A program made the translations under genes and the position numbers. A stretch of DNA of 64,000 nucleotides. Source: Macrostomum lignano. Lineage: Eukaryota. Numbering within the stretch: the stretch's first letter is position 1; every line of letters begins with the position of its first letter. Positions 1,459 through 50,021 of the stretch are shown here, piece by piece. Under the pieces are notes generated by a model that searched no databases, was not told the origin of the DNA, and was given only the letters and a program-made list of their open reading frames with translations. Location: positions 1 to 64,000 of the forward strand of contig NIVC01003605.1 of NCBI GenBank assembly GCA_002269645.1. The letters run 5' to 3'.

Positions 1459-1508
1459 GATAGATAGTTAGATAGATATATAGATAGATGGATGGATAGA
1501 TAGATAGT

Positions 1509-1597
<89 letters not shown>
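1459..1597. repeat. (GATA)n microsatellite
   Basis: Read directly. Confidence 0.97.
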
Positions 1598-1699
1598 GTG
1601 ATCAGCTGCTGCAGCCTCGATGCGACAACGACAGAAAGCAAATCGAAACTCTCAACGGTCTCCAAGCTCGTTCGATACGGACGGACAAGACAGGCAGGC

Positions 1700-1734
1700 A
1701 AACAGACAGACAGATAGTCACAACAGACGGAGAC

Positions 1735-1784
<50 letters not shown>

Positions 1785-1821
1785 GGACAGACAGACAGAC
1801 AGTCACAACAGACGAAGACAC

Positions 1822-1866
<45 letters not shown>

Positions 1867-1884
1867 GTCACAACAGACGAAGAC

Positions 1885-1927
<43 letters not shown>

Positions 1928-2030
1928 GTCACAACAGACGAAGACACAGATAGACAGACAGACAGACAGAAAGACAGTCACAAAAGACGAAGACACAGAC
2001 AGACAGACAGACAGGCAGACAGACAGACAG
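1700..2030. repeat. (GACA)n with interspersed GTCACAACAGACGAAGACAC units
   Basis: Read directly. Confidence 0.95.
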
Positions 2031-2086
2031 AAATGCAGACACCCAGAATGCCATTCAGCGCCAGAGAATCCCACTCACTCCGCCAG

Positions 2087-2290
2087 CCTGTCATTCGTGG
2101 CAATGAGCCGCACCGGAGCTGCCGCAGCCCTCCGGCGCGTGTCGGTTCGAATCTCCCTGCCGGACTTCAATCGGTTTTTCTCCGCCTCCGGTTCGGACTC
2201 TGCCGGCCTCGCAACCGAGGAGTCTCATCACAAGGATTTTAGCGTGGCCGTCACTCAGTGGGCTGTCGGAGGACTGTTCGACTTGGTGGA
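2087..2290 (+). CDS. Gene A exon (LSFVAMSRTG...QWAVGGLFDLV)
   Basis: ccgccag| acceptor and GA|gtgagt donor; phase 2-2; GC-rich open frame. Confidence 0.7.
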
Positions 2291-2308
2291 GTGAGTTGCT
2301 GTGCGGCT

Positions 2309-14765: not shown

Positions 14766-15445
14766 CATCAGCTCAGATCTCATCTGGCAATTCAGCCGGT
14801 GCCTTGGCGTGCACTTTTACCGCCGCTCCGCTCTCCTCTCTCACCCCCCCGGGCTGGCTGGTGCACTTTTGTTATAACAAAAGTGTCCGAGCATTCTTCC
14901 TCTCTCACCCCTGCGAGACTCAACCAGCCCTCTTCCCCGTGCAGGCCCTGCTCACAGCTCACAATCAGCGCCTCCCTTGTCTCAACCAATCCTTGGCTTG
15001 AAACTCCAAACCGAGTTCGCGTGCAACGGTTCTTCTTTCAAATTTTGCCTCACAGCTTCGAGCTGAGATGGAAAGAGAGGATGATATTTTTGCTGCTTCC
15101 GATTCTCGTCAATCCGGGCCATCCGGTTATGATTTATTGAAACCTGAGCAGGGATCGGGAAGGGGGCGCAGCCGGAGAGCCGGCCACGCCAGCGGAAGAG
15201 GAAATGGGCGATGATCAAAGGAATCTGGGAATTGATGGGGCGGAGATGCGGGCTCTGATTAGGCTGAGACTCGAGCTGAGCTCAGAAATCATCCGAGCCG
15301 CTGCCCGCCCCCGCTCGTCGGCTTCAGGCGCCTGTCCTCAAGGAATCAAAAAATTGTCACTCTGGATGAGAAAGATGAAATTCTTTTGTAGCCTGATCTC
15401 AACTGCTGCACTGAGACTCTCCGCCACCTCCCCTGTCCTCTGCAG

Positions 15446-15552
15446 CACTGCTTCAGCATTTTCTATAAGAAAGACGGCCAGAGGCACTACGACCTGCGGG
15501 CCGAGTCTGAGGCCGAGTGCAACACCTGGGTGGAGGCCATCAGAAATGCCAG
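15446..15552 (+). CDS. RASGRF: RasGRF exon 2 (end of PH1)
   Basis: ctgcag|[35 protein letters not shown]|gtaggc; phase 0-2. Confidence 0.92.
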
Positions 15553-15564
15553 GTAGGCCTTCAG

Positions 15565-16236
<672 letters not shown>

Positions 16237-16410
16237 TACTTTCGATGTTTTCAAACTGTGTTTCAGGCAATTTCCAATTTTAATTGCTTAAAATGGCTGC
16301 CCTTGTGCTGTCTCAAATCCCACAAGGATTAGCAATCCTCAATTGCTTAGCCTCACAGCATCAAACCCAGCGTCAGTCCCATCTCACAGCTGGACTGTCT
16401 CGAATTTCAG

Positions 16411-25208: not shown

Positions 25209-25640
25209 GTGAGTAGCCGATGTGTCTCATGTGAGTAGCCGATGTGTCTCATGTGAGTAGCCGATGTGTCTCATGTGAGTAGCCGATGTGTCTCATGTGA
25301 GTAGCCGATGTGTCTCATGTGAGTAGCCGATGTGTCTCATGTGAGTAGCCGATGTGTCTCATGTGAGTAGCCGATGTGTCTCATGTGAGTAGCCGATGTG
25401 TCTCATGTGAGTAGCCGATGTGTCTCATGTGAGTAGCCGATGTGTCTCATGTGAGTAGCCGATGTGTTTCATGTGAGTAGCCGATGTTTCTCATGTGAGT
25501 AGCCGATGTGTCTCATGTGAGTAGCCGATGTGTCTCATGTGAGTAGCCGATGTGTCTCATGTGAGTAGCCGATGTGTCTCATGTGAGTAGCCGATGTGTC
25601 TCATGTGAGCAGCCGATGTGGCTCATGTGAGCAGCCGATT
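25201..25640 (+). repeat. 22-bp tandem repeat of the exon 6 splice donor, 20 copies
   Basis: TGTCTCAT|GTGAGTAGCCGATG; GT at 25209+22n, n=0-19. Confidence 0.97.
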
Positions 25641-25684
25641 TGCCATATGCACATCTATAGACCCCAAATCTTTCGATATCTATA

Positions 25685-26560
25685 GATCCCATATCCCTAG
25701 ATCCCATATCCCTAGATCCCATATCCCTAGATCCCATATCCCTAGATCCCATATCCCTAGATCCCATATCCCTAGATCCCATATCCCTAGATCCCATATC
25801 CCTAGATCCCATATCCCTAGATCCCGTATCCCTAGATCCCATATCCCTAGATCCCATATCCCTAGATCCCATATCCCTAGATCCCATATCCCTAGAGTCC
25901 ATATCCCTAGATCCCATATCCCTAGATCCCATATCCATGGAGTCCATATCCCTAGATACCATATCCCTAGATCCCATATCCCTAGAGTCCATATCCCTAG
26001 ATCCCATATCCCTAGATCCCATATCCCTAGATCCCGTATCCCTAGATCCTGCATATCCCTAGATCCCATATCCCTAGATCCCATATCCCTAGATCCCATA
26101 TCCCTAGATCCCATATCCCTAGATCCCATATCCCTAGAGTCCATATCCCTAGATCCCGTATCCCTAGATCCCATATCCCTAGATCCCATATCCCTAGATC
26201 CCATATCCCTAGATCCCATATCCCTAGAGTCCATATCCCTAGATCCCATATCCCTAGAGTCCATATCCCTAGATCCCATATCCCTAGATCCCATATCCCT
26301 AGATCCCGTATCCCTAGATCCCATATCCCTAGATCCCATATCCCTAGATCCCATATCCCTAGATCCGTATCCCTAGATCCCATATCCCTAGATCCCATAT
26401 TCCTAGATCCCATATCCCTAGATCCCATATCCCTAGATCCCATATCCCTAGATCCCATATCCCTAGAGTCCATATCCCTAGATCCCAATCCCTAGATCCC
26501 ATATCCCTAGATCCCTAGATAGATCCCTAGATAGATCCCTAGATAGATCCCTAGATACCA
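25685..26560. repeat. 15-bp minisatellite ATCCCATATCCCTAG
   Basis: About 57 copies. Confidence 0.97.
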
Positions 26561-26940: not shown

Positions 26941-27029
26941 GTAATTTTCTGAGCGGAGCACTCTAGTAGTACGCGTGTACTTTTGTTGGAAATCCTACCA
27001 GCATTTCTACCAAATTCTTCCCGTTGCAG

Positions 27030-27108
27030 AATTATGGAAAATTGTCTCTGGCCGACTGCACCTTGTCGGAGGATGGCTCATCTGACTACTACTATGTTGA
27101 TGATGACG
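27030..27108 (+). CDS. RASGRF: RasGRF exon 8
   Basis: ttgcag|NYGKLSLADCTLSEDGSSDYYYVDDD|gtgagg; phase 0-1. Confidence 0.88.
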
Positions 27109-27127
27109 GTGAGGCAGAGTATCAAAT

Positions 27128-27945
27128 ATCCCATTTCCAGATATCCCATTTCCAGATATCCCATCTCCAGGTATCCCATCTCCAGATATCCCATCTCCAG
27201 GTATCCCATCTCCAGATACCCCATCTCCAGATATCTCATCTCCAGATATCCCATCTCCAGATATCCCATCTCCAGATATCTCATCTCCAGATATCCCATC
27301 TCTAGATACCCCATCTCCAGATATCCCATCTCCAGATATCTCATCTCTAGATACCCCATCTCCAGGTATCCCATCTCCAGATATCCCATCTCTAGATATC
27401 CCATCTCCAGGTATCCCATCTCCAGATACCCCATCTCCAGATATCCCATCTCCAGATATCTCATCTCCAGATATCCCATCTCCAGATATCCCATCTCTAG
27501 ATACCCCATCTCCAGATACCCCATCTCCAGATATCCCATCTCCAGATACCCCATCTCCAGATATCCCATCTCTAGATACCCCATCTCCAGATACCCCATC
27601 TCTAGATATCCCATCTCTAGATACCCCATCTCCAGATATCCCATCTCTAGATACCCCATCTCCAGATATCCCATATCCAGATACCCCATCTCTAGATATC
27701 CCATCTCTAGATACCCCATCTCCAGATATCCCATCTCTAGATACCCCATCTCCAGATACCCCATCTCCAGATATCACATCTCCAGATACCCCATCTCTAA
27801 ATACCCCATCTCTAAATATCCAATCTGCAAATATCCCATTTCTAGATATCCCATCTCTAAATACCCCATCTCTAAATATCCAATCTGCAACTATCCCATC
27901 TCTAGATGTCCCATTTCTAAATATCCAATCTGCAAATATCCTCAC
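27128..27945. repeat. 15-bp minisatellite ATATCCCATCTC(C/T)AG
   Basis: About 54 copies filling RasGRF intron 8. Confidence 0.97.
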
Positions 27946-27951
27946 TCGCAG

Positions 27952-28142
27952 ATCCCAACATACAGACCAACCTGCTGAGCATTGAGCCGCAGCAGCCAAA
28001 GGACAGCCGGAACGCCCAGCCAGACTTCAACGGGCTGGACTTCCGGCTCATCCTTCACACGAAATCGGGACCGCCGGTGACCATCACCCTGGTGGCCAAC
28101 TCGGTACAGGAGAAGGCCGCCTGGTGTTCCGACATTAATCAG
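27952..28142 (+). CDS. RASGRF: RasGRF exon 9 (end of PH2)
   Basis: LDFRLILH...TITLVANSVQEKAAWCSDINQ; phase 1-0. Confidence 0.93.
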
Positions 28143-29171: not shown

Positions 29172-29611
29172 GTGAGGCTGGGAAAAATCGTCTCAAGTGC
29201 CGTCAGAACTGCTGATAACTACTGACAATTTTTCAAAAATACCACCATAGTTAGTAACGCTTTATGCAGACTTATTACTGTGCATTATCCAAAGTAGATA
29301 GCAACTGAGGCACCGCCCGAGTCCCAGACTCAAACTGTCCCGCTTTCATTTATTTTTGCCATTGCGCGCGCGGATTTTAGCAGTCACGGCCTGGTTGTTT
29401 GCTACAATAGCAAGCTGTTAAAGTGAGTCGGTTTGAGTTCGGCTGGCTGGATAGAGACTTTATTTTGACGGTGGTCTTTTCATTTTTCAAACAAGGCTAG
29501 GCCTTGAGCTATATATATATTTACATATATTATTAGTAGTTCATTGGGGCCTGCATGTCAGTGGCATTTCGAATCTGCATGCACTTTTAATTCCACTGGT
29601 GCACATCTGAG

Positions 29612-30475
<864 letters not shown>

Positions 30476-30715
30476 CAGACAGCAGGCAGGAGACAAAGTC
30501 GTTTTTTCTTTGAAATTTGTTTTTTTGCTTTGACTCTGGCGATATAAACGTTTTCGTTAATATTTTCAGTCTCGTAGAAATCCTAATTTTACACAATACT
30601 CGTAGCACATTGCTGTTTTGATAATTTAGCTCATTTGCACAGAATTTGCTCATCTTTTAGATGTAGAATTTCGATCACTTAAGAATTGATAATTTTCACC
30701 CAACCTGCTTGCCAG

Positions 30716-33429: not shown

Positions 33430-34935
33430 CAGCGGCGTCGCCACCGGGGGACAGAGTGGGACATGTCCCCCCCAGTAAAATCTATGGGGGGACATTCCAA
33501 TGCTTTGTTCCCCCTACCCCACCTTGTGACCCGTTATGGAAATCAATAATTTTGCTTGAGGGCGACAAAATATAGCGCCTGCAGCACTATAATGAGTGTC
33601 TGCGGCGCTAAAATGAGTGCCTGCGGCGCTAAAATGAGTGCCTGTGGCGCTAAAATGAGTGTCTGCGGCGCTAAAATGAGTGCCTGCGGCGCTAAAATAA
33701 GTACCTGCGGCGCTAAAATGAGTGCTTGCGGCGCTGAAATGAGTGTCTGCGGCGCTAAAATGAGTGTCTGCGGCGCTGAAATGAGTGTCTGCGGCGCTGA
33801 AATGAGTGTCTGCGGCGCTAGAATGAGTGCCTGCGGCGCTGAAATGAGTGTCTGCGGCGCTGAAATGAGTGTCTGCGGCGCTGAAATGAGTACCTGCGGC
33901 GCTAAAATGAGTGCTTGCGGCGCTGAAATGAGTGTCTGCGGCGCTAAAATGAGTGTCTGCGGCGCTGAAATGAGTGTCTGCGGCGCTGAAATGAGTGTCT
34001 GCGGCGCTAGAATGAGTGCCTGCGGCGCTAAAATGAGTGCCTGTGGCGCTAAAATGAGTGTCTGCGGCGCTAAAATGAGTGCCTGCGGCGCTAAAATGAG
34101 TGCCTGCGGCGCTAAAATGAGTGTCTGTGGCGCTAAATGAGTGCTGCGGCGCTAAAATGAGTGCCTGCGGCGCTAAAATGAGTGCCTGCGGCGCTAAAAT
34201 GAGTGCCTGCGGCGCTAAAATGAGTGTCTGCGGCGCTAAAATGAGTGTCTGCGGCGCTAAAATGAGTGTCTGCGGCGCTGAAATGAGTGTCTGCGGCGCT
34301 GAAATGAGTGTCTGCGGCGCTAGAATGAGTGTCTGCGGCGCTAAATGAGTGCCTGCGGCGCTAAATGAGTGTCTGCGGCGCTAAAATGAGTACCTGCGGC
34401 GCTAAAATGAGTGCTTGCGGCGCTGAAATGAGTGTCTGCGGCGCTAAAATGAGTGTCTGCGGCGCTGAAATGAGTGTCTGCGGCGCTGAAATGAGTGTCT
34501 GCGGCGCTGAAATGAGTGTCTGCGGCGCTAGAATGAGTGTCTGCGGCGCTAAAATGAGTGTCTGCGGCGCTAAAATGAGTGCCTGCTGCGATAAAATGAG
34601 TGCCTGCGGCGCTAAAATGAGTGCCTGCGGCGCTAGAATGAGTGCTTGCGGCGCTAAAATGAGTGCCTGCGGCGCTAAAATGAGTGCTTGCGGCGCTAAA
34701 ATGAGTGCCTGCGGCGCTAGAATGAGTGCTTGCGGCGCTAAAATGAGTGCCTGCGGCGCTAGAATGAGTGCTTGCGGCGCTAAAATGAGTGCCTGCGGCG
34801 CTAAAATGAGTGCCTGCGGCGCTAAAATGAGCGTTGACAACACCGATTCTGAAAATAATGCACATGTAGGGATTTAGTCATGTACACGTACATGTAGAAT
34901 TCTTGGCTTTGTCCCCCTCACGATAAAATCCCCTG
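33430..34935 (-). mobile_element. MITE-like family copy 3 (inverted, about 59 x 21-bp units)
   Basis: Both unique arms match copy 2 in reverse; flanks tttaattc / tatatttc (6 of 8) may be a decayed 8-bp TSD. Confidence 0.7.
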
Positions 34936-37396: not shown

Positions 37397-39611
37397 GTGA
37401 GTTCTCTGAGTGCCGAGCTGCCGATATCTATTCTATTAGGCTGCTACGATTAGGTAATGACTAATTAAATGATTTGGGATGCTGTGATAAGTGCGCACCA
37501 GGACAAGCGCGCGATCTTGAGCAGGGTCTGGTAAGGGTTGTAGGGCCCGACGGACACGAAAGCAAAATTGTCTCGAGTATGACATCCGGAATTGAAATTT
37601 GATGTCTAACGGACACTTGAGGCTTGTTCGCGCCGATGTAAACTGCAAGGCTGATGCATGAGGGTCGTAAATGAAGCTTTAGGCTCATATTTTTCAAGAA
37701 TAAATTTCACTTATTCAGGGTAAGCGCAAGGGCAGATAATCAGAATGAAGATGAGGTAGAGAAGAGATCTCTAGAGACTGATGTATACTGACCAATTTTT
37801 GTTAATTTTTAATTGTTAATTGTTAATTGTTAATTGTTAATTGTTACATACATACAATAATCCTTGCAATATGTCCGGGAAAGTGATCGATTAAATCCCG
37901 CAAAATAAAATCCATGTCAATATCCTCCCTGAAAGTGAGCTTTAAAGTGGTTTAATAGTTACTATTTTTTCCATTCACAAAATAATGAGTTTTGGCCATA
38001 GACAATTCCTTAGATTTCATTCATTCTCTCTTTCTCTGGAGTGGTGGTGTGCAAACGTACTAATCGCCCCCTTGACCCCACTGTCTTCTGACTTTACCAT
38101 AGACGTTTTCAGCGGGCCGTGAAACTAACTGAATGAATTGAATTAAATGGGATTTTACCATAGACAGTCTCTCAGCGGGCCATGAAACGCGATTTCTCGC
38201 CCGCTAACTATAACACTAATATGGATAGGCTGCAGAGGGCAGAAACGGGCTATAACGCCGTAGCAAAGACAATTTTATGACAATCAATATTGGTAGATTA
38301 ACCCGTATTTTGTTAAAAATTGATTGTACGAGCCAGTTTCGTCGTGCGCTGCCATTAATTGGGAGCCGATCTAGAAGTGGGATGTGCCAATAGAGAAAGG
38401 CCAACTCTTTTAGCACTTCTTCAGTGTCTGTTTTTTCTTCATCCCATGATTTAATCAATCTATCGTTTTCAAAACTATCCGAGCGAATTTCTAACACTGC
38501 TCAATCTTTCCTGACTCACTGTATAGGATGAGCGCCGAGCATTTTCAAAGGTAAAAACTGCAGCATAAAAGAAAACTAGAAGAATGCCATTATTGTGCTG
38601 CAGCTTTTCAACTTTGGTTAATAGCTAATTAATAATTAATTAAATGATTTCTACAGTCGCGCGTCACCGCTCCTGCTTCCAGTTGCTGTTGTGACGCATA
38701 GACCTACTTAGCCTCGGAGACAGAACAAGTCATATCGGCCCCGTTAATTTAGACAAAAATATTTGTTCACTGTTTATGGAAATTATGCATGGTATAGTGG
38801 TTTAATAGTGCTTGTTATTATAATTTTTCATAAGCATCATTTCGAGCTGCTTGTGCAAATGTCACCACTATAACAATGTCTTTCAGTTTTTCATTCACAA
38901 AGTTGCGCGGCCTTTTCAGGTTATAAACACAAAGGGCAAATAGTTAGCTAAGCATAATAAAAAACTGCATTTAGCTTCCAACAATGATATTTCCGCATCT
39001 TTGTCGATTTTTCGAATATTATTGTCAAAGTCTTGAAGCTAATACACTTCGTTATGAAATGGACGTCCCATCATCTTCACTAACTACTTGAATAGTGTCT
39101 AGATAGCCAACTTGAATAGGTTACAACCTAAACTGTTCAGCTTTGACAAACTGCTGGATTTGACAGCCTCCAATTCCAACATTCACTGAACTATTGTTGT
39201 GTCACCGACCCCTCACTTATCAATGGGCAGCTTTCAAACATGTAGGGGTGTGCTGAAATGCCTGTCTACCAGCTGCAGTATGATCAGTACGTATATTGTG
39301 AACTTCCAATGAACCGTTCATCCCAGTGACCGCTTTCGTGTGCATTGAAACTTGGTAGAGACGTTTGAAGGACTGCATGTACACATGCAGTGTAAATGCT
39401 AGTATCAGCAGAAACTAATTTGACGTGCGATAAGCGTGATTAAGCCACCTGTCGACTAGTCAAGACCCAGATGGGAAGAGGTGCTAAGTAAAAAGACAAA
39501 ACACTGTAAAACTATATGGAAAGATTACCGATTACTGAGCTGTAACTGTAACTGGTTTTGATTAGATAATATGATGTCACACCAAAAAATCACAAAACCA
39601 CACAATTGCAG

Positions 39612-43423: not shown

Positions 43424-46142
43424 TCAGTTCAATTCCAGCAGCTGGCCAGGCACCAGACCCCTGTGCCCATTCACCTCAGCGTTATACATTCCGTCGGGGC
43501 GCATCGGACCGAACGTCGTAACATCGTCGCCGCGGCGCAGCTCAAGTTCATAAGAGGGAAAAGCGGATGGTGATTCTTCACTCGGTCGGTAGTCTCTAGC
43601 AGCGCGTCGCTTTGCACCCTGTTGCTGCTGTGGCTCCTCATGAGGCTGCAGATGTGACGGTGAAAACTGCGGCGGTGACTGCTGTGACTGATACTTGGGC
43701 GCCGGCGAAGAGTAATATGGATCCATAGGCCCGCTGCTTGGCCGGCCTATGGGGGCGTCGTCCCTGCCCGGACTGCGACCTTTAGCGGCATCGCCTGCCG
43801 GTATTTCAATCTTGTCCGATGTTTCACCATCGTAGCCGAATGTCTGAACGCCCAGTGAGACGAGAGCGCCAAGTGAAGTCTTCGGAATGAGCGACTTGGT
43901 TAGGCGGCAGCTCACCACGGTCTGCTCCTCGACACCATTCACGAACACTCTGTAGCCAGCAACCACAACGCCTTGGTTCCGGTCCAGATTGTCCAGCTGC
44001 GGCGCTTCCCACTCCAGCATGATGCTGCCGTCGCCAAGGACGCGGCTAATGCGTACGTTCATCGGCGGATCGAGCAGCCGAGGTGTCGGCCGATTTCTTG
44101 TGGGCTCAATGTCGGCGCGACTCAACCTGGCAGCAGTAGGTCTGGTCTGTGGTGGCGAACGGCCCCGCTGTCGCACTGGTTCGGGCTGCACAGGGTACGC
44201 CGCAGCTGCTGGACTATAGGGACTCGAGTACGGATCGTCAGCGGGATGATTTTGCGGCTGTCGCGAGGCGCGAAGTGATGGATAGTCATTTGAATCGTCA
44301 CGTGTCGGTTGCTGTTGCTGCGGATGAGACTGGTACTGAGGTTTAATTGGATCTTCCGGTTGCTGGTGTTGATGTGGATCACGATTATTAGCGTAATTTG
44401 GGTAATCACTCTCAGGCTTCTGCTGCTGCGGCTTCTGTTGTTGCTGGTATTGTGTGGCAGCGCGCGGCTCGTATGCGGCTTTTGGCGACGCTGGAGGATC
44501 TTCATAGGCAGGTGAGTAATAAGGCTGTTTTTGTGGCTGCTTCTGTGGCTGTTTTTGCTGCTGCTGCTCCGATTGCGACAGTGGTGAAAGCGGTGCCTGG
44601 TCACTGGATCTGGGTCGACCCTGTGACTTTGCGACGATCTGCTCTGAGAGCGGCGTGTCGTCCGGGTTGACCAGGTAGTCGATTGGATCAACATAGTCAT
44701 CTACAGTTTTCCTCTGATTCTGATCCGCCTCCTGCAGCAGCTCCCTCGGCAAGCGCTCCCCACCTCCGCGAAGCTCGTTAGCCAGGCGTCGAATCAGGTC
44801 GTCCTTCTCCTTGCAGCGTTTTTGCAAGCGCTCAACTTTTGGCCTCAGCTTTGCAACAAGCAGCTCGTTCTTGAACTTGTCTCGCTCTAGGTCTTCGTAG
44901 CGCTTCTTAATTTTGTGAAAGTCAGTCTCAAGATCGCGGTAGAAGTCATTCTCACGCTCAAGCTCGTTAAGAACATCCTTGAGCTTCCCCAACTCCTGCT
45001 GCAGGCCCTGTTCATCTGTGGACTTTTCTCGCAACATGTCCTTGAGCTGCTGGGTCTCAACTAGCAAGTCTCGTCGATCCTTTAAAACTTTATTTTTGTC
45101 CTTTAAGGCCATTTTCAGATCATGCACTAGTTCCTCAAGGGTCTCCTTGTCTCGTTTAAGTGTCTCAAGATGGAACACTTTAGCTTCCAGTGCTCGCACA
45201 GCTTCAGAAATATAGGCGTTCTCTTCTTCAAGGTTTCGACATCGTTCGCGGTAGTCAGCGAGCTTGTCCACCTGCTCTTTAAGCGCCTTGTTCTCGCGCT
45301 CGGCTGTTCGATAGTGACTGTCCGACACCGCTTTTTCGTTCTCCGCACTAGCGATGGAGCTCTTAGCTTCAACAAGTTCGCGGTTTAGGTTCTCAATCTG
45401 CTCATTTTTTGCTCTTACCTCTCTCTCCTTTCTCGCTAGCTGGTTTTGCAGACTTTTTAACTCAGATTTGGCGCCATCAACCTCCAACTCGATGCTTGCC
45501 AGTTCATCTTTGGTCCTGTCTAGCTCCTCGCTAACCGCCTGCAATCTTTCAGCCTCCTTCAGTGCATTCTTAGCGACAATGACTCGATCCAGGTTGTCTA
45601 CTTCTGACTGCAGCTGAAATATCATGCGCTCTTTGTCAGCAATGTCTTCACCAAGCCTTGCATTGTCCTCCGTGAGGTCGGCGATGACTTTCTCCTGGTT
45701 GCTGATTTGTCTCTCCTTGTCCTTGATCAGGTGCCTCAGCATGTAGGCATCGTCCGCTATTTTCAGCTTGCGATTCATTTCGCGTTCAATGTATCGATTT
45801 GTGTCCAGCTCGCGGCTTTGAGCACGGTTCTCCGTTTTCAGATCGTCTAGCTCAGACTCATGGGGCTGGTGAGAGCGTCTAGCTGCTTGAGAAGCGTAAC
45901 TAGTACCGTTCTCAGCGCCACCATTCTCTTGCTGCAACTGCTTATTGAGCCAAGGTGACGTCACTGGCTGGGTGCCGTTTGGATGTTCGTCCCTCAGGGT
46001 GGAGTTCTTCAAACGCTGTGGGTCCTGATGTTGGTGCTGATGAGGCGGCGGTTGTTGGCTTTGACCGAACCCGTTGTCTTCGTGTTGATGCGGAGGACGC
46101 TCTCGAATTGACGGCTTCTTTGGCACTGGCGGAGGCTGACGT

Positions 46143-46174
<32 letters not shown>

Positions 46175-46243
46175 TTGTTGCTGAAACTGGTTATAGCTCA
46201 GCGGCCTAGGATTCGGATATGACTGCGGCTGCTGACTTGTCAT
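43424..46243 (-). CDS. Intronless 939-aa RIM-binding-protein-like protein (polyQ, long coiled coil, one FN3, one C-terminal SH3)
   Basis: Uninterrupted ATG-TGA ORF; FN3-like LDPPMNVRI...IMLEWEAP...VAGYRVFVNG; RIMBP-type SH3 RDYRPSEESPSAFPSYELELRRGDDVTTFGPMRPDGMYNAEVNGHRGLVP. Confidence 0.88.
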
Positions 46244-47224
46244 GATTATACAATTGCAGCAACTTCGCTCTCTGCTTCAAAGTTTTTTTGAAGTTTTCCT
46301 TAGAAAACTGTTAATAGCCTGTGTCTGTTGTTGAAGAATCGCTAATCCTGTATCAAAGTTGGTCGCGCCTCTCTGCGTAACGCTTCTAGCTTTTATTGAC
46401 GGAATAAGCTAACTATCGAGCTGGTTGTCAAAGCTAATTTGGGCGGTTCCCTGCCAAACAACAGGCGTCTAGAGAGGAGAGAGGCGGGGGTTGTTAACGG
46501 AGTCGGTACGAGCTCTGTGCGCATAAAACACCGCGGGAGGCAGAAGGCTTGTGCGACTCTTAGGCTGAACAGCTTGGCTGCCTAGGTCTGACGCACTTTG
46601 GGGAGGGGGGGGGGCTGGCTGAAAGGGCTGCTCAGACCGAGGCAAGAAGCCGAAATATGCGGGTGATCAGAATAATCGATTTCTTCTCGCCGCGATCGCC
46701 TATTTGGACGTCAGGGTCTCAGCTGGCCCTAGCAGTCTCGGGCTCTCTCTCCCTTTTCCTCTCTCCATTGCCACGTTTCAACCCCTGCTCCCGTGAGAAG
46801 GGGGTAGAGGGGAGCGAGAGGAAAAAATAGCTGCGGTATTTTAGTAGCAAAGCTGGTGGCAGCATACCAGCGTAGCTGTGCAGATCTTATTGATCTGATC
46901 AATTCCTTTCGGCATGCTGGAATGCTTTCACAATCCCAAGTCAGAAGCACCACCAGGCTTAAGCAAGTTTCAGCTCTTCGAGGTCACTTTAGGAAGGAAC
47001 TTTGTGAAGGATTATTTAATCAACTTTGCCTGTTCGCCTTGCCTATGTCCCTAGTGTTAAGCTCGCGGAGATTATTGGTAGCGTTAACTCCGCTACCATA
47101 GACAAACTTAAAATTGATAGTAAAACAAAAACACGTATATTTATTGAACGTTAAAACGGTAAACAAGCGTTTAGTCAGTTATAGTTGTTTTAGTTCGTTA
47201 GTCTACAACTTTTTATTGCTATCA

Positions 47225-47320
47225 CTATTGCATCTTGTTTGTCGGGGAACTGAAATTGATCGTGGTTGGCCCGTAGAAGTTTAGTACAGGGGCGGACCAT
47301 TGTTGACTTAGAGCCAAAGC
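47225..47320 (-). CDS. Probable terminal exon of the Crypton recombinase (ALALSQQWSAPVLNFYGPTTINFSSPTNKMQ*)
   Basis: In frame after removing a 56-nt GTGAGT...CCGCAG intron (47321-47376). Confidence 0.55.
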   Translation of the reverse strand, partial: ALALSQQWSAPVLNFYGPTTINFSSPTNKMQ

Positions 47321-47376
47321 CTGCGGTCCGGAAATATTGGAGTTGCCTTTGGCAATTGCTCTTCAACCTCACTCAC

Positions 47377-48108
47377 GCCGCTCGTTTTGGCTGCGGCAGT
47401 GGGCTCTCCATATAGTACTGCCGACATGTTCTTCTCTGACTTACGGACGTCGATGTAGGACCTGTCAGCCTTTTCGGTAATCCTTCCAGTCTTCTGGCTT
47501 GCTATTTCCTTACTGATGCCGCCTTCCACCAACCTAGTCTTGCAGGTCCGACGCAGACTACTGTTCGTGATAGGTCCGGTCGTACTGCCGGCTTCAATCT
47601 GCTTGCCAGAGAACAGATTCTTCACGACGTTTTCAATCGTATGCACACCCATTGGTTGACTACGATACCATATATCAGATGTCGGCGCCTTGATCGGTGT
47701 CAGATAGAACGCAGAGTGACCCTTGAGTCCGAATTGCTCCGGCCGGTGACGAACGTAGGTCTTATACATCGTGATGACACATTTGTCTGGGTCGCCATTC
47801 GAATAGATCCTGGTTGTTTTCAGCTCAACGTGTGCCTTGTGCAAACCAACTCTCCCGTTCTTCGACATTCGCTCGGTGTACACCAGACATTCAGTGTCAT
47901 TTTCCTTGACGAGCACAAGCTGCGATCGCTCACCGAATTCTAACGCGCGATGTTCAGCACTCGCTCTGAGCGATAGGTGCAGACCTACCAGGGGTAAGTG
48001 GTACAGCAGGGTATTCACCAGCTGCGTCGGATTAGACATTCCGAAACGTCCCTCTGCCCAGAGTTGCACTTCTTCGTCTAGGCCGATTACCCTCGCTCGC
48101 TTTGGTGT
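47377..48108 (-). pseudogene. Crypton recombinase catalytic part
   Basis: EEVQLWAEGRFG...PTQLVNTL...LSLRASAEH...SKN...KC...Y...RP...FYLTP...WY...PMGVHTI...ITNSSLRRTCKTRL...TG...SY. Confidence 0.85.
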
Positions 48109-48112
48109 AAGT

Positions 48113-48589
48113 AAGATGAAAACCTGATTTGGCACTCAATTTCATGGCGGCGTCGATGCACTGCCTGGTTAGGACGAACTCGTTGTCCTTGAAGATGGAC
48201 CAATCATGCAGAAACTTTGTTTGTAGGTGGAACTGGATACTGGCGACAAAACCTTTGATCGTGGCAGGCGGGTACATATCTCCGTTGTCCTTGCGCAGTT
48301 CAAGCAGAAAGCACTGCAGCACGTAGTCCCATTCCTTCTTGCTCCACTCGAACATATCCTTCACAACTTTCAACTGAGCAGTTTGGCGCACTCGCCAGTC
48401 AGTATACCAAGCGCACAGTTTATTCCAATTGCTACGAACCTTTTTGGCCGTTGTTTTTGGAATTCGCGAGTCTCTAAATTCGGCAAGCCGGACGTCAACG
48501 TTGGTGCTAGTGCTTTGCACTGTAGACGCTTCTTCATTGGTAATCGTTCGCATCACTTCCATTATATCGTCAGCGGTTAGCTCCTCCAT
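48113..48589 (-). pseudogene. Crypton recombinase N-terminal part (codons 1-159)
   Basis: RIPKTT...W...WDYVLQCFLLELRKDNGDMYPPATIKGFVASIQFHL...SIFKDNEF is typical of the DUF3504-family N-terminal region; frame broken at 48108-48115. Confidence 0.8.
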
Positions 48590-48695
48590 TTTGGTAAAAT
48601 TTGTGGCTTGTTTATTTCACAGCTTGCTTCTCTCTTCCTAAACCATCAGTCCTCTTTGATTTAGACTTGGTATTTTACCATAGACAATACAGGGA

Positions 48696-48715
48696 GCGGA
48701 GATTTAAATCTCCGC
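48696..48715. other. Perfect 20-bp palindrome GCGGAGATTTAAATCTCCGC
   Basis: Self-complementary as read; 8 bp outside the right Crypton direct repeat. Confidence 0.95.
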
Positions 48716-48796
48716 CGGAGATTAACTCGTGCTAAATATAGATTGCCTCGAGGCTTACAGGCTGTTGATTAAATTAAAATCAACCACTGAAGCGAA

Positions 48797-48913
48797 ACAA
48801 TAAATGTGTAATAAACCACTGAAACGAGGAGATACTCTATGCAGATTCAGAAGCCGAGGAGATTTTGCCATAGAGTATCTCCTCGTTTCAGTGGTTTATT
48901 ACACATTTATTGT
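48797..48913. repeat. Perfect 45-bp inverted repeat with a 27-nt spacer
   Basis: 48797-48841 (ACAATAAATGTGTAATAAACCACTGAAACGAGGAGATACTCTATG) is the exact reverse complement of 48869-48913. Confidence 0.95.
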
Positions 48914-48967
48914 GCGGAAATGGGCTGTGGAAGACGGGTTTTATAGATTAAAAAATTACACAAATGT

Positions 48968-49199
<232 letters not shown>

Positions 49200-49910
49200 C
49201 TCAAAACCAAAGATAAAAAATCAGTTCAGAAAACACTCAGTATCCCGAAAGTGCTTTGAGAGCGCTTTGTCCCAGGCTCCTGCTTAGCTAGTCAAGTAAA
49301 TCAATCAATCATTCCGTACTAGTAAACAAGCAGTTCGCATTGGCACCCGCATTAGGCAGTGACAAGTATCTTGGCTCTCTGCAGCGTAAAAATAGGATGG
49401 AAAAGCCCAGCTTACTCCCTCTGAGTTCCAAGGCCGGCCATCTTTGACATGAATAATTAAATGGTATTAGAGTTGCAGAAGCTCTTTGGAGGTGCTCAGC
49501 TCTGGTCGCGGACGAAAATAGATTGCAGAAAGACGTGCGACCCGCTCGCTCGATCGTGTCTGCCAGTTCAAGTGGTGCATCTAACAGTCAGGTTCGAGTG
49601 CTCTTAGAGGCTGTCTCAAGGTTACTGACGGGCTGCGCTCGGCTAGTTTCTGCGAGAATGACGCAATCGAAAATCTCCCTCTGATACAAGAATGCGTCAG
49701 CAAGAAGGCAGTCGACGAAACGCTGAGTGCGGGTCTGCCCACGGTGCCTGCAGCATCAGAAGCAACACCTCCAGCACCGGCTGCGGGCAGTACGTCTCGG
49801 CGCTGTCATGTGGCCTTCCAGCTGGAGTTGCCGACGTCGCAACAGGTCACTTGGACGGACCAGGCCAGTTTACATGACTAAATCCGTACAGTATTGTTTT
49901 TAACACTCAT

Positions 49911-50021
49911 TATGGCGCCCTGAAGCAAAGTTATTGATTTCCATAACGGGTCACAAGGTGGCGCGGGAGGACAAAGCACTGACATGTCCCCCAGCCCCCC
50001 CCCCCGGTGGCAACGCCCCTG
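49911..50021 (+). mobile_element. MITE-like family copy 4 (3' arm only)
   Basis: TTATTGATTTCCATAACGGGTCACAAG...GACAAAGCA...GGCAACGCCCCTG matches the 3' arm and TIR. Confidence 0.65.

What the first reader, a model, noticed from the sequence alone, without database searches (positions are those of the whole stretch)
47094..48687. Compact Crypton tyrosine-recombinase element with definable ends (12-bp direct repeats)
Seen: a minus-strand DUF3504-type recombinase coding region sits between two identical TACCATAGACAA sequences. The ATG is 86 bp inside the right repeat and an AATAAA lies about 35 bp inside the left one, so one transcription unit fills a 1594-bp cassette. Known: Cryptons are YR-encoding DNA transposons with short terminal direct repeats and are thought to move through circular intermediates; animal members with mapped ends are comparatively scarce. 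Inference: this is a young, near-complete member of a possibly undescribed family, and the 12-mer is its crossover site.
Basis: partly seen in the sequence, partly recalled or inferred. Interest (0 to 1): 0.8.

Follow-up and report, generated by a model that had tools for sequence, protein, structure and literature searches.

The report
Broken hairpin-bearing Crypton-like transposon copy
This is a frameshifted copy of a small tyrosine-recombinase ("Crypton-like") jumping gene in the flatworm Macrostomum lignano. The 12-base repeats are real but are probably not its ends, because signals shared with related elements (a 117-base hairpin, inverted repeats, GGAGAT motifs) lie outside them.

Summary
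TACCATAGACAA occurs exactly at 47094 and 48676, and between the two copies lies a minus-strand QRICH1-N + DUF3504 gene (ATG 86 nt inside the right copy, AATAAA 34 nt inside the left).

Two corrections are needed. First, the gene is broken by a 4-bp tandem duplication (TAAGTAAG, 48108-48115). Second, the 12-mers are most likely not the element's ends.

Relatives from aquatic metagenomes and sequencing-run assemblies (40-62% protein identity) share one layout. It runs 5' hairpin of 106-135 bp, then an inverted repeat, the gene, and the complementary inverted repeat at the 3' terminus. One family (L009/L010) has both ends mapped from two insertions.

The window has the same parts outside the 12-mers:
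- hairpin 48797-48913;
- inverted repeats 48693-48782 and 47010-47093;
- a GGAGAT triple carrying a 16-mer identical to L009;
- a 3' terminal motif at 47013.

The predicted element is about 47013 to 48913 or slightly beyond (~1.9 kb).

The window is contig NIVC01003605.1 of Macrostomum lignano. Copy number in that genome could not be tested, and a duplicate contig carries the same insertion.

The subfamily's active site is R-K-S-R-R-Y, with both histidines replaced. The element is a Crypton-type member with an architecture I could not find described. Interest is moderate.

The parts
47010..47093 (-). 3' inverted repeat (IR3). It holds the terminal motif GTTGATTAAATA (gene strand, ending at 47013, the predicted 3' end of the element) and one GGAGAT motif at 47067-47072.
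   Evidence: It aligns with the reverse complement of 48692-48782 with score 52, against 23.9 +/- 4.3 in shuffles. The terminal motif aligns with the mapped 3' end of L009/L010, with the IR3 of L031 and with the contig end of L029.
47094..47105 (.). Left copy of the 12-mer TACCATAGACAA. It lies just inside IR3.
47140..47145 (-). AATAAA polyadenylation-type signal, 162 nt after the stop codon.
   Evidence: Read directly from the sequence.
47308..48589 (-). Tyrosine-recombinase-like gene with no intron, in two frames in this copy. N-terminal part is a QRICH1-type domain; C-terminal part is DUF3504. Active-site positions are R208, K243, S343, R346, R369 and the Tyr of DRSYID.
48108..48115 (-). 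TAAGTAAG, a 4-bp tandem duplication that shifts the frame.
   Evidence: Dropping 48112-48115 gives one open 425-codon frame. The junction then reads FHLTPKRAR, against FHVAPKRAR in P0001.
48676..48687 (.). Right copy of the 12-mer. It lies 86 nt upstream of the ATG and 10 nt (48688-48697) downstream of the GGAGAT triple.
48693..48782 (-). 5' inverted repeat (IR5). It holds the GGAGAT / ATCTCC / GGAGAT triple (48698-48722) and the 16-mer shared with L009 and L028 (48708-48723).
48778..48795 (.). Third, partial copy of the hairpin-arm motif (AATCAACCACTGAAGCGA).
   Evidence: D16, I22
48797..48913 (.). 117-bp hairpin with perfect 45-nt arms, each carrying GGAGATAC, and a 27-nt loop. It is the predicted 5'-terminal structure; the exact 5' end is not mapped.
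   Evidence: I1. The 231-nt stretch 48690-48920 containing it folds at -68 kcal/mol, z = -14. Hairpins of the same size and position occur in L009, L003, L013, L014, L031, L002 and L029.

Best explanation
The locus is one degenerate copy of a compact (about 1.9 kb) DNA transposon that encodes only a tyrosine recombinase. It belongs to the Crypton / DUF3504 lineage and lies upstream of a RIM-BP-like gene in Macrostomum lignano.

On the gene strand the element runs as follows:
1. a 117-bp hairpin;
2. an inverted repeat containing three GGAGAT motifs;
3. the first 12-mer;
4. an 86-nt leader;
5. a 425-codon intronless gene;
6. AATAAA;
7. the second 12-mer;
8. the complementary inverted repeat with one GGAGAT motif, ending in GTTGATTAAATA.

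The 12-mers are therefore internal and sit just inside the inverted repeats.

Shown here: the anatomy, its conservation across at least five related families, the mapped ends of one related family, and the Cre-like fold.

Inferred: the recombinase binds the GGAGAT(A) motifs, the element leaves as a circle, and joining the two ends rebuilds a palindrome of roughly 250 nt (IR3 - hairpin - IR5) that serves as the recombination site. Re-integration would use a short core (TATGT in L010).

This copy cannot supply the enzyme, because a 4-bp duplication breaks the frame. The role of the 12-mer is unresolved. It may be an accessory or regulatory motif, or partly coincidence.
For: - Protein: Pfam DUF3504 and QRICH1. 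QRICH1 9HJT matches at E 3e-18, and a XerA alignment places the catalytic positions. The AlphaFold model (pLDDT 75.7) matches Cre at TM about 0.53 over about 365 columns.
- Mobility of relatives: L009 and L010 are 97% identical over 2099 bp with unrelated flanks on both sides. L003 and L004 are 100% identical with different 5' flanks.
- Hairpin upstream of the gene in seven loci.
- IR5/IR3 pairs: WIN z 6.5, L031 z 8.6, L013 z 6.4, L009 z 5.6.
- IR3 lies at the mapped 3' end in L009/L010, and the WIN motif aligns with it.
- The 16-mer is identical in WIN, L009 and L028; in WIN and L009 it lies about 115-135 nt upstream of the ATG, closer in L028.
- In L028 versus L009 this region is 88% identical against 80% for the coding region.
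- GGAGAT occurs 7 times in WIN non-coding parts against 0.26 expected.
- A joined-end model folds as one long stem at -84 kcal/mol, z -13.7.
- The frameshift is shown.
Against: - No second, independent copy of this particular family was available, so the window's own ends are inferred by homology and are not mapped. The 5' end is not fixed at all.
- The 12-mer repeat is significant in its local context, sits exactly at the inner edge of both inverted repeats, and this model does not explain it.
- Comparable direct repeats are absent in most relatives.
- The subfamily lacks both active-site histidines, so its catalytic competence is uncertain.
- The hairpin could in principle be a separate foldback insertion. 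Its recurrence in other families argues against that.
Confidence: 0.62

Rival explanations
1. First reader's model. The mobile unit is the 1594-bp cassette, the 12-mer is the crossover core shared by the circle and the target, and the DNA outside is host sequence.
For: The 12-mers are exact and in direct orientation. No shuffle gives such a repeat between the two untranslated segments. On the gene strand the 12-mer contains TATGG, the terminus reported for CryptonS elements (PMC3212892). L003 and L004 diverge at a TATG 53 nt upstream of the ATG, a similar position.
Against: The DNA outside the 12-mers carries family-conserved elements at conserved distances from the ATG: the 16-mer, the GGAGAT triple, the hairpin and the 3' terminal motif. 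The cassette sides of the 12-mers have no GGAGAT motif and no inverted repeat, so the circle's site would have no visible binding sites. The core also occurs at 37996-38166.
Confidence: 0.13
2. Nested or secondary event. The gene cassette recombined, at the 12-mer, into the centre of a palindromic non-autonomous relative (IR-L + 12-mer + IR-R, about 190 bp). Equivalently, recombination between the two 12-mers can delete the gene and leave a foldback MITE.
For: The inverted repeats abut the 12-mers on both sides. L003 carries a 265-bp MITE-like palindrome beside its element; its ends read TACAGAGGAG and it contains ATAGACAATA, which resembles the window junction ATAGACAATACAGGGAG. L009's 3' flank contains a piece of an L002-type hairpin arm, so these elements do land next to each other's palindromes.
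Against: The distance from the GGAGAT triple to the ATG is the same in the window (114-133 nt) as in L009 (120-151 nt), where the layout is the element's own. That would be a coincidence if the gene had been inserted secondarily. No solo palindrome was found in the window.
Confidence: 0.12
3. A domesticated, single-copy DUF3504 host gene (QRICH1/ZMYM-like) rather than a transposon.
For: The closest solved structure is human QRICH1. The same insertion is present in the duplicate contig. No close paralogue turned up in the protein collections.
Against: The ORF is frameshifted. It has no intron and no host-type added domain. It keeps Arg, Lys, Arg and Tyr, which QRICH1 lacks. It is flanked by transposon-type hairpin and inverted repeats shared with mobile relatives.
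Confidence: 0.03
4. The 12-mer pair is coincidence or a host or element regulatory motif with no role in transposition.
For: Window-wide E is 0.16. Five CCATAGACA sites lie on one strand. A 15-mer at 38152 matches the right junction better than the left 12-mer does. Direct repeats are not a family hallmark.
Against: Local significance is 0 of 300 shuffles. L009 has 11-mer direct repeats at the equivalent place just after its triple.
Confidence: 0.35

Closest known systems
CryptonA elements (animal Cryptons; Kojima and Jurka 2011, PMC3212892) and Glomhoppers (PMC13465315)
   Same: It is a DNA element whose only gene is a DUF3504-type tyrosine recombinase, with no reverse transcriptase and no DDE transposase. 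Copy number is low and ends are hard to define. Circular excision and reintegration is the proposed mechanism.
   Different: It is very small (1.6-2.1 kb). It has a conserved 106-135-bp 5' hairpin, an IR5/IR3 pair and GGAGAT motifs, whereas the 2011 survey found no terminal repeats in animal Cryptons. The active site is R-K-S/T-R-R-Y rather than R-H-R-Y. The host phylum, Platyhelminthes, is not in the 2011 list.
Fungal and stramenopile Cryptons (CryptonF, CryptonS)
   Same: Short terminal direct repeats: TATGT at both ends of L010, against the 4-6-bp repeats and the TATGG termini of CryptonS.
   Different: No GCR1_C or C48 peptidase domain. The 12-mer is twice the known repeat length and is probably internal.
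Domesticated DUF3504 genes (QRICH1, ZMYM2/3/4, WOC, KCTD1, KIAA1958)
   Same: Same N-terminal and DUF3504 fold. QRICH1 9HJT is the best structural and sequence match.
   Different: It keeps the C-terminal Arg and Tyr segment, has no added host domains or introns, is frameshifted, and is flanked by transposon-type structures.
Integron attC sites and the CTX-phi attP hairpin (works-like comparison only)
   Same: A tyrosine recombinase is paired with an imperfect palindrome of about 60-150 nt. Here the apex is often GCGAAGC, which from my own knowledge is a very stable DNA mini-hairpin.
   Different: No evidence here for single-stranded substrates. The recombinase is carried by the element itself, and the host is eukaryotic.
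DIRS / Ngaro / VIPER tyrosine-recombinase retrotransposons
   Same: Combinations of inverted and split direct repeats at the ends, and a circular intermediate.
   Different: No reverse transcriptase or RNase H, and far smaller.

Membership tests
Crypton (CryptonA group) | The only gene is a tyrosine-recombinase-type protein; no RT and no DDE transposase | tested here: met
   Within 46000-50000 the only ORFs with a domain hit are the two halves of the DUF3504 gene. The model has a Cre-like fold.
Crypton (CryptonA group) | The protein groups with DUF3504 / CryptonA recombinases | tested here: met
   PF12012 at E 3.9e-23 and PF25561 at E 4.3e-8. QRICH1 at E 3e-18. 1104 representative proteins match the profile at E <= 1e-30. 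No tree including named Repbase Cryptons was made.
Crypton (CryptonA group) | Complete catalytic tetrad R-H-R-Y | tested here: not met
   R208, R346 and Tyr are present. The His II position is Ser343, aligned to the H of XerA HQLRH. Among 107 relatives scored, His II is H in 72 and S or T in 26, the window's subclade being S/T; His III is R in 22.
Crypton (CryptonA group) | Short (4-6 bp) terminal direct repeats, no TIRs and no LTRs | tested here: inconclusive
   The ends of the window copy are not mapped. The relative L010 has TATGT at both ends. However, the family has an IR5/IR3 pair and a hairpin, which departs from the published description.
Crypton (CryptonA group) | Copies at different genomic sites (mobility) | not testable with these tools
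   The M. lignano genome cannot be searched by DNA here. The only other copy found is the same locus on the duplicate contig NIVC01001159.1. The feature is met for relatives.
Crypton (CryptonA group) | Extrachromosomal circular intermediate | not testable with these tools
   This needs reads or PCR.
Domesticated DUF3504 host genes | Loss of the catalytic Arg/Tyr segment, and fusion to host domains or introns | tested here: not met
   The SLRR...GR...Y segment is kept. There is no extra domain and no intron.
Domesticated DUF3504 host genes | Intact ORF conserved in synteny across species | tested here: not met
   The ORF is frameshifted. Synteny across species is not testable here.
DIRS/Ngaro-type YR retrotransposons | Reverse transcriptase / RNase H next to the recombinase | tested here: not met
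   No such ORF lies between or beside the repeats.

The most novel reading that the evidence does not exclude
These are 'hairpin Cryptons': a widespread but undescribed subclass of compact tyrosine-recombinase transposons of aquatic animals. Their two ends, once joined in a circle, rebuild a roughly 250-nt palindrome with a GCGAAGC-type apex. That folded or cruciform site, rather than a simple duplex core, would be the recombination (or replication) site, a eukaryotic counterpart of integron attC or the CTX-phi hairpin. It would be served by a recombinase that has replaced both active-site histidines. The internal 12-mers would be a second pair of sites able to pop the gene out and leave a foldback MITE.
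Probability: 0.15. Interest if true: 0.8.

Novelty: new variant of a known kind. Interest (0 to 1): 0.45.

Why it matters
The ends and cis-acting sites of animal Cryptons have been an open problem. The reference survey found no terminal repeats in them (PMC3212892), and the 2026 Glomhopper study could not define boundaries either (PMC13465315).

The family here has one set of mapped ends and a conserved, easily recognised architecture: hairpin, inverted-repeat pair, GGAGAT motifs and a 3' terminal motif. That gives concrete sequences to test for recombinase binding and circle formation. It also gives a search signature for annotating such elements, which gene and repeat pipelines appear to miss: this copy is unannotated in the gene calls available here.

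M. lignano can be made transgenic, so an intact family member could be assayed in vivo.

The specific copy in the window is broken and of little importance by itself.

Tried and rejected
- Retrocopy with a 12-bp target-site duplication: rejected. There is no poly(A) between AATAAA and the left 12-mer.
- Cut-and-paste transposon with a target-site duplication: rejected. There are no inverted repeats just inside the 12-mers.
- Short intron at the frame break: rejected. The only GT..AG is 24 nt, too short and a multiple of three; the break is a CTTA duplication.
- Known RNA genes: only sub-threshold hairpin-like Rfam hits and no tRNA.
- Other copies or remnants in the window: none by blastn or tblastn.
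- Exact look-ups of the window's ORFs, seven start variants: not in the collections.
- Empty allele: the duplicate contig starts inside the cassette (window 48100) and carries the insertion.
- A right-hand homeologous contig could not be fetched, because the neighbouring gene models are spliced.
- Metagenome scan: 11 loci, mostly 28-34% identical, sharing coding homology only.
- Viral contigs: nothing.
- CTATG enrichment: weak and inconsistent.
- My own crude palindrome finder was unreliable and was replaced by the repeat finder.
- Literature searches for Crypton plus flatworm or hairpin found nothing relevant.
Full report
**Source and setting.**
The 939-aa ORF at 43424-46243 (minus strand) is found exactly on two contigs of assembly GCA_002269645.1. 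Contig NIVC01003605.1 has coordinates equal to the window's; the other is NIVC01001159.1. NIVC00000000 is the Mlig_3_7 assembly of the flatworm Macrostomum lignano. It is a Canu/PacBio assembly with 180 Mb of duplicated blocks (PMC5730564).

The ORF is RIM-BP-like, with Ig_RIMBP2 and SH3_2 domains. The finding lies 850 bp upstream of it, on the same strand.

**Observation.**
TACCATAGACAA is exact at 47094-47105 and 48676-48687. Between the two copies, on the minus strand, lie two ORFs:
- 48589..48032, with a QRICH1 domain (E 4.3e-8);
- 48135..47308, with DUF3504 (E 3.9e-23).

The ATG is 86 nt inside the right repeat, and AATAAA (47140-47145) starts 34 nt inside the left one. All of this is as described.

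The two ORFs overlap in different frames. On the gene strand the sequence reads CAT CTTA CTTA CACC. Removing one CTTA (48112-48115 on the plus strand) gives one open 425-codon frame. Its junction, FHLTPKRAR, matches FHVAPKRAR of the closest relative. So the copy carries a frameshift caused by a 4-bp tandem duplication, or an assembly error of that form.

**Protein.**
A search of 5.8 billion proteins gave 22 relatives. The best is 62% identical (P0001); the rest are 30-48%. All lie on contigs of 1.4-5.4 kb from marine (TARA) and other ENA or JGI metagenome assemblies and from Logan assemblies of sequencing runs.

A profile search of 1.84 billion representatives found 14,154 proteins at E <= 1e-3 and 1,104 at E <= 1e-30. 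Most are 350-480 aa.

The closest solved structure by sequence is human QRICH1 (9HJT, E 3e-18). A weak alignment to the archaeal XerA protein fixes the catalytic positions. The AlphaFold model (pLDDT 75.7) matches QRICH1, and matches Cre recombinase over both domains (E about 1e-5, TM about 0.53).

The window protein keeps Arg208, Glu212, Lys243, Arg346 and the Tyr of DRSYID. It has Ser343 where His II should be and Arg369 where His/Trp III should be. Among 107 relatives scored, His II is H in 72 and S or T in 26, and His III is R in 22. The S/T + R combination marks the window's subclade. That subclade includes the recently copied elements described below.

From my own knowledge of Cre mutagenesis, Arg, Lys, Arg and Tyr are the indispensable residues and the histidines are more tolerant. 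Activity is therefore possible but not shown.

**Relatives are mobile, and one family has mapped ends.**
L009 and L010 come from two different metagenomes and encode the same protein, P0003. They are 97% identical over 2099 bp (L009:181-2279) and unrelated on both sides. The unit starts with TATGTG. It ends with ...GGATATGTA in L010 and ...GGATATATA in L009, so L010 has TATGT at both ends.

L003 and L004/5/6 are 100% identical over 1819 bp. They diverge at a TATG 53 nt upstream of the ATG, and three contigs from three assemblies stop at the same 3' base.

**Shared architecture.**
A hairpin lies upstream of the gene in every locus that has enough 5' sequence:

| Locus | Hairpin coordinates | Size |
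|---|---|---|
| Window | 48797-48913 | 117 bp |
| L009 | 187-304 | 118 bp |
| L003 | 327-443 | 117 bp |
| L013 | 109-214 | 106 bp |
| L014 | 794-928 | 135 bp |
| L031 | 246-360 | 115 bp |
| L002 | 1-217 | at least 217 bp (contig start) |
| L029 | 1-62 | partial |

- The hairpin apices are related: AGAATCTACGAG... and GCGAAGC or GCGTAGC. The window has the decayed form GAAGCCGAG.
- Directly after the hairpin comes a segment (IR5) whose complement (IR3) lies downstream of the gene. Scores against shuffles are L031 17/17 nt (z 8.6), L013 (z 6.4) and L009 (z 5.6).
- In L009/L010, IR3 is the mapped 3' end. In L029 it is the contig end.
- GGAGAT/ATCTCC is strongly enriched in the non-coding parts of four families. 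The window has 7 against 0.26 expected; L009 has 4, L031 has 4 and L003 has 5.
- The motif occurs in the hairpin arms, as a triple starting about 115-150 nt upstream of the ATG, and once near the 3' end.
- L028 is 80% identical to L009 in coding DNA but 88% identical across the triple and the box that follows it.
- Even relatives at about 30% identity (JAAUYG01) each have one hairpin, about 350-470 bp upstream of the estimated ATG.

**The window copy in that light.**
Every one of these elements is present, and all of them lie outside the 12-mers.
- The hairpin at 48797-48913 has perfect 45-nt arms. The 231-nt stretch 48690-48920 that contains it folds at -68 kcal/mol, z -14.
- The triple is at 48698-48722, 114-133 nt upstream of the ATG, against 120-151 nt in L009. 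It contains the 16-mer AATCTCCGGCGGAGAT, identical in the window, L009 and L028.
- The flanks just outside the two 12-mers are imperfect inverted repeats of each other: 47010-47097 against 48782-48692, score 52 against 23.9 +/- 4.3.
- The outer end of the left one reads, on the gene strand...AAGTTGATTAAATA. This aligns with ...AAGTTGGTTAAATA (L029 contig end)...ATCGTTGGATATATA (L009 mapped end) and ...GCGTGGGATATATA (L031).

I therefore place the 3' end at about 47013 and the 5' end at or shortly beyond 48913. The 5' end is not mapped. The element is about 1.9 kb, close to the 2.1 kb of L009.

A model of the joined ends folds into one long stem in which IR3 pairs with IR5 around the hairpin (-84 kcal/mol, z -13.7). 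The same holds for L009, where ATCGTTGGATATAT at the 3' end complements ATATATCCAACGAT just after the hairpin.

**What the 12-mers are.**
They sit at the inner edge of the two inverted repeats. Locally the repeat is significant (0 of 300 shuffles). L009 has two 11-mer direct repeats at an equivalent place, just before and just after its triple, with partners in a 3' palindrome.

Against a defining role:
- such repeats are absent in L013, L003, L014, L002 and L029;
- the window-wide E-value is 0.16;
- the core CCATAGACA recurs at 37996, 38095 and 38156 on the same strand;
- the right junction matches a 15-mer at 38152 better than it matches the left 12-mer.

The cassette sides of the 12-mers carry no GGAGAT motif and no inverted repeat. 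A circle cut there would have no visible recombinase sites and no conserved upstream region.

I conclude that the 12-mers are probably not the element's ends. Their function (accessory site, regulatory motif, a secondary recombination pair that could delete the gene, or part coincidence) remains open.

**What could not be tested.**
- Copy number and insertion polymorphism in M. lignano. No tool here searches that genome by DNA. The window's ORFs are not in the protein collections, and the locus is not among the gene calls.
- The one other copy, contig NIVC01001159.1, starts at window 48100 and is the same locus at 99.5% identity. It differs at 37 positions in the first 1 kb (the cassette) and at about 10 in the next 2 kb. 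That first kilobase is also a PacBio contig end, so I draw no conclusion from it.

**Comparison with what is known.**
Kojima and Jurka (2011, PMC3212892) report the following:
- 4-6-bp terminal direct repeats for fungal and stramenopile Cryptons, with TATGG for CryptonS;
- no terminal repeats in animal Cryptons;
- animal hosts in six phyla that do not include flatworms;
- very low copy numbers.

The 2026 Glomhopper paper could not define boundaries of fungal CryptonA elements. Full-text searches for Crypton with hairpin or palindrome found no description of this architecture. Repbase and Dfam could not be checked.

I file the element as Crypton-like by gene content and protein family. Two features depart from the definition: an incomplete R-H-R-Y tetrad, and the presence of a hairpin and inverted repeats.

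**Verdict.**
The locus itself is a dead transposon copy. The family architecture uncovered around it is the more interesting result and is directly testable.

Noticed in passing
window 37984-38190: A cluster of three sites holds the core of the 12-mer: GGCCATAGACAAT, TTTACCATAGACG and ATTTTACCATAGACAG. All are on the plus strand, next to TCAGCGGGCCRTGAAAC repeats 63 bp apart. The third site resembles the cassette side of the right junction over about 30 nt. No recombinase remnant, GGAGAT motif or known RNA is present there.
   Followed up: partly
window 48100 = position 1 of contig NIVC01001159.1 (L008/L027): The duplicate contig begins inside the cassette, 8 bp from the TAAGTAAG frameshift site. 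Its differences from the window are concentrated in the cassette (37 in 1 kb against about 10 in 2 kb). This could be contig-end error or faster divergence.
   Followed up: partly
window 48968-49200: A long (CAA)n/(CTA)n microsatellite starts about 55 bp beyond the hairpin, at the predicted 5' side of the element.
   Followed up: no
window protein, residues about 197-199 (YHL-PLV-GLHL): A three-residue insertion (PLV) is absent from all 16 aligned relatives. It lies just before the conserved GLHLSLRA box that holds the first catalytic Arg.
   Followed up: no
L003:1-265: A 265-bp MITE-like palindrome with ends TACAGAGGAG... lies next to a family member. It contains ATAGACAATA, the same 10-mer as the window junction (ATAGACAATACAGGGAG).
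   Followed up: partly
L009:2318-2329 (3' flank) versus L002:64-75: The flank of one family's insertion contains a 12-mer (ACTAACTCTATG) from the hairpin arm of another family. This suggests that these elements insert next to one another's palindromes.
   Followed up: no
L002:41-61, 159-177, 1858-1878: A 21-nt piece of the 5' palindrome arm is repeated exactly 214 nt downstream of the stop codon. It is the longest 5'/3' repeat seen in any relative.
   Followed up: partly
proteins P0029, P0037, P0050, P0087: Four representatives of 1236-1476 aa match the profile in two or three stretches each. They may be tandem or fused copies, or mis-joined gene models.
   Followed up: no
window 1468-2294, 15204-16332, 25618-26376, 26983-27999, 29541-30653, 33556-34877: Large blocks of short tandem repeats give long spurious ORFs in several frames. 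This is consistent with the repeat-rich M. lignano genome.
   Followed up: no
window 43424-46243 (-) and 51259 onward (+): The neighbouring genes are a RIM-BP-like exon (Ig_RIMBP2, SH3_2) and a PDZ-domain gene model. The element lies between them and is not annotated.
   Followed up: partly
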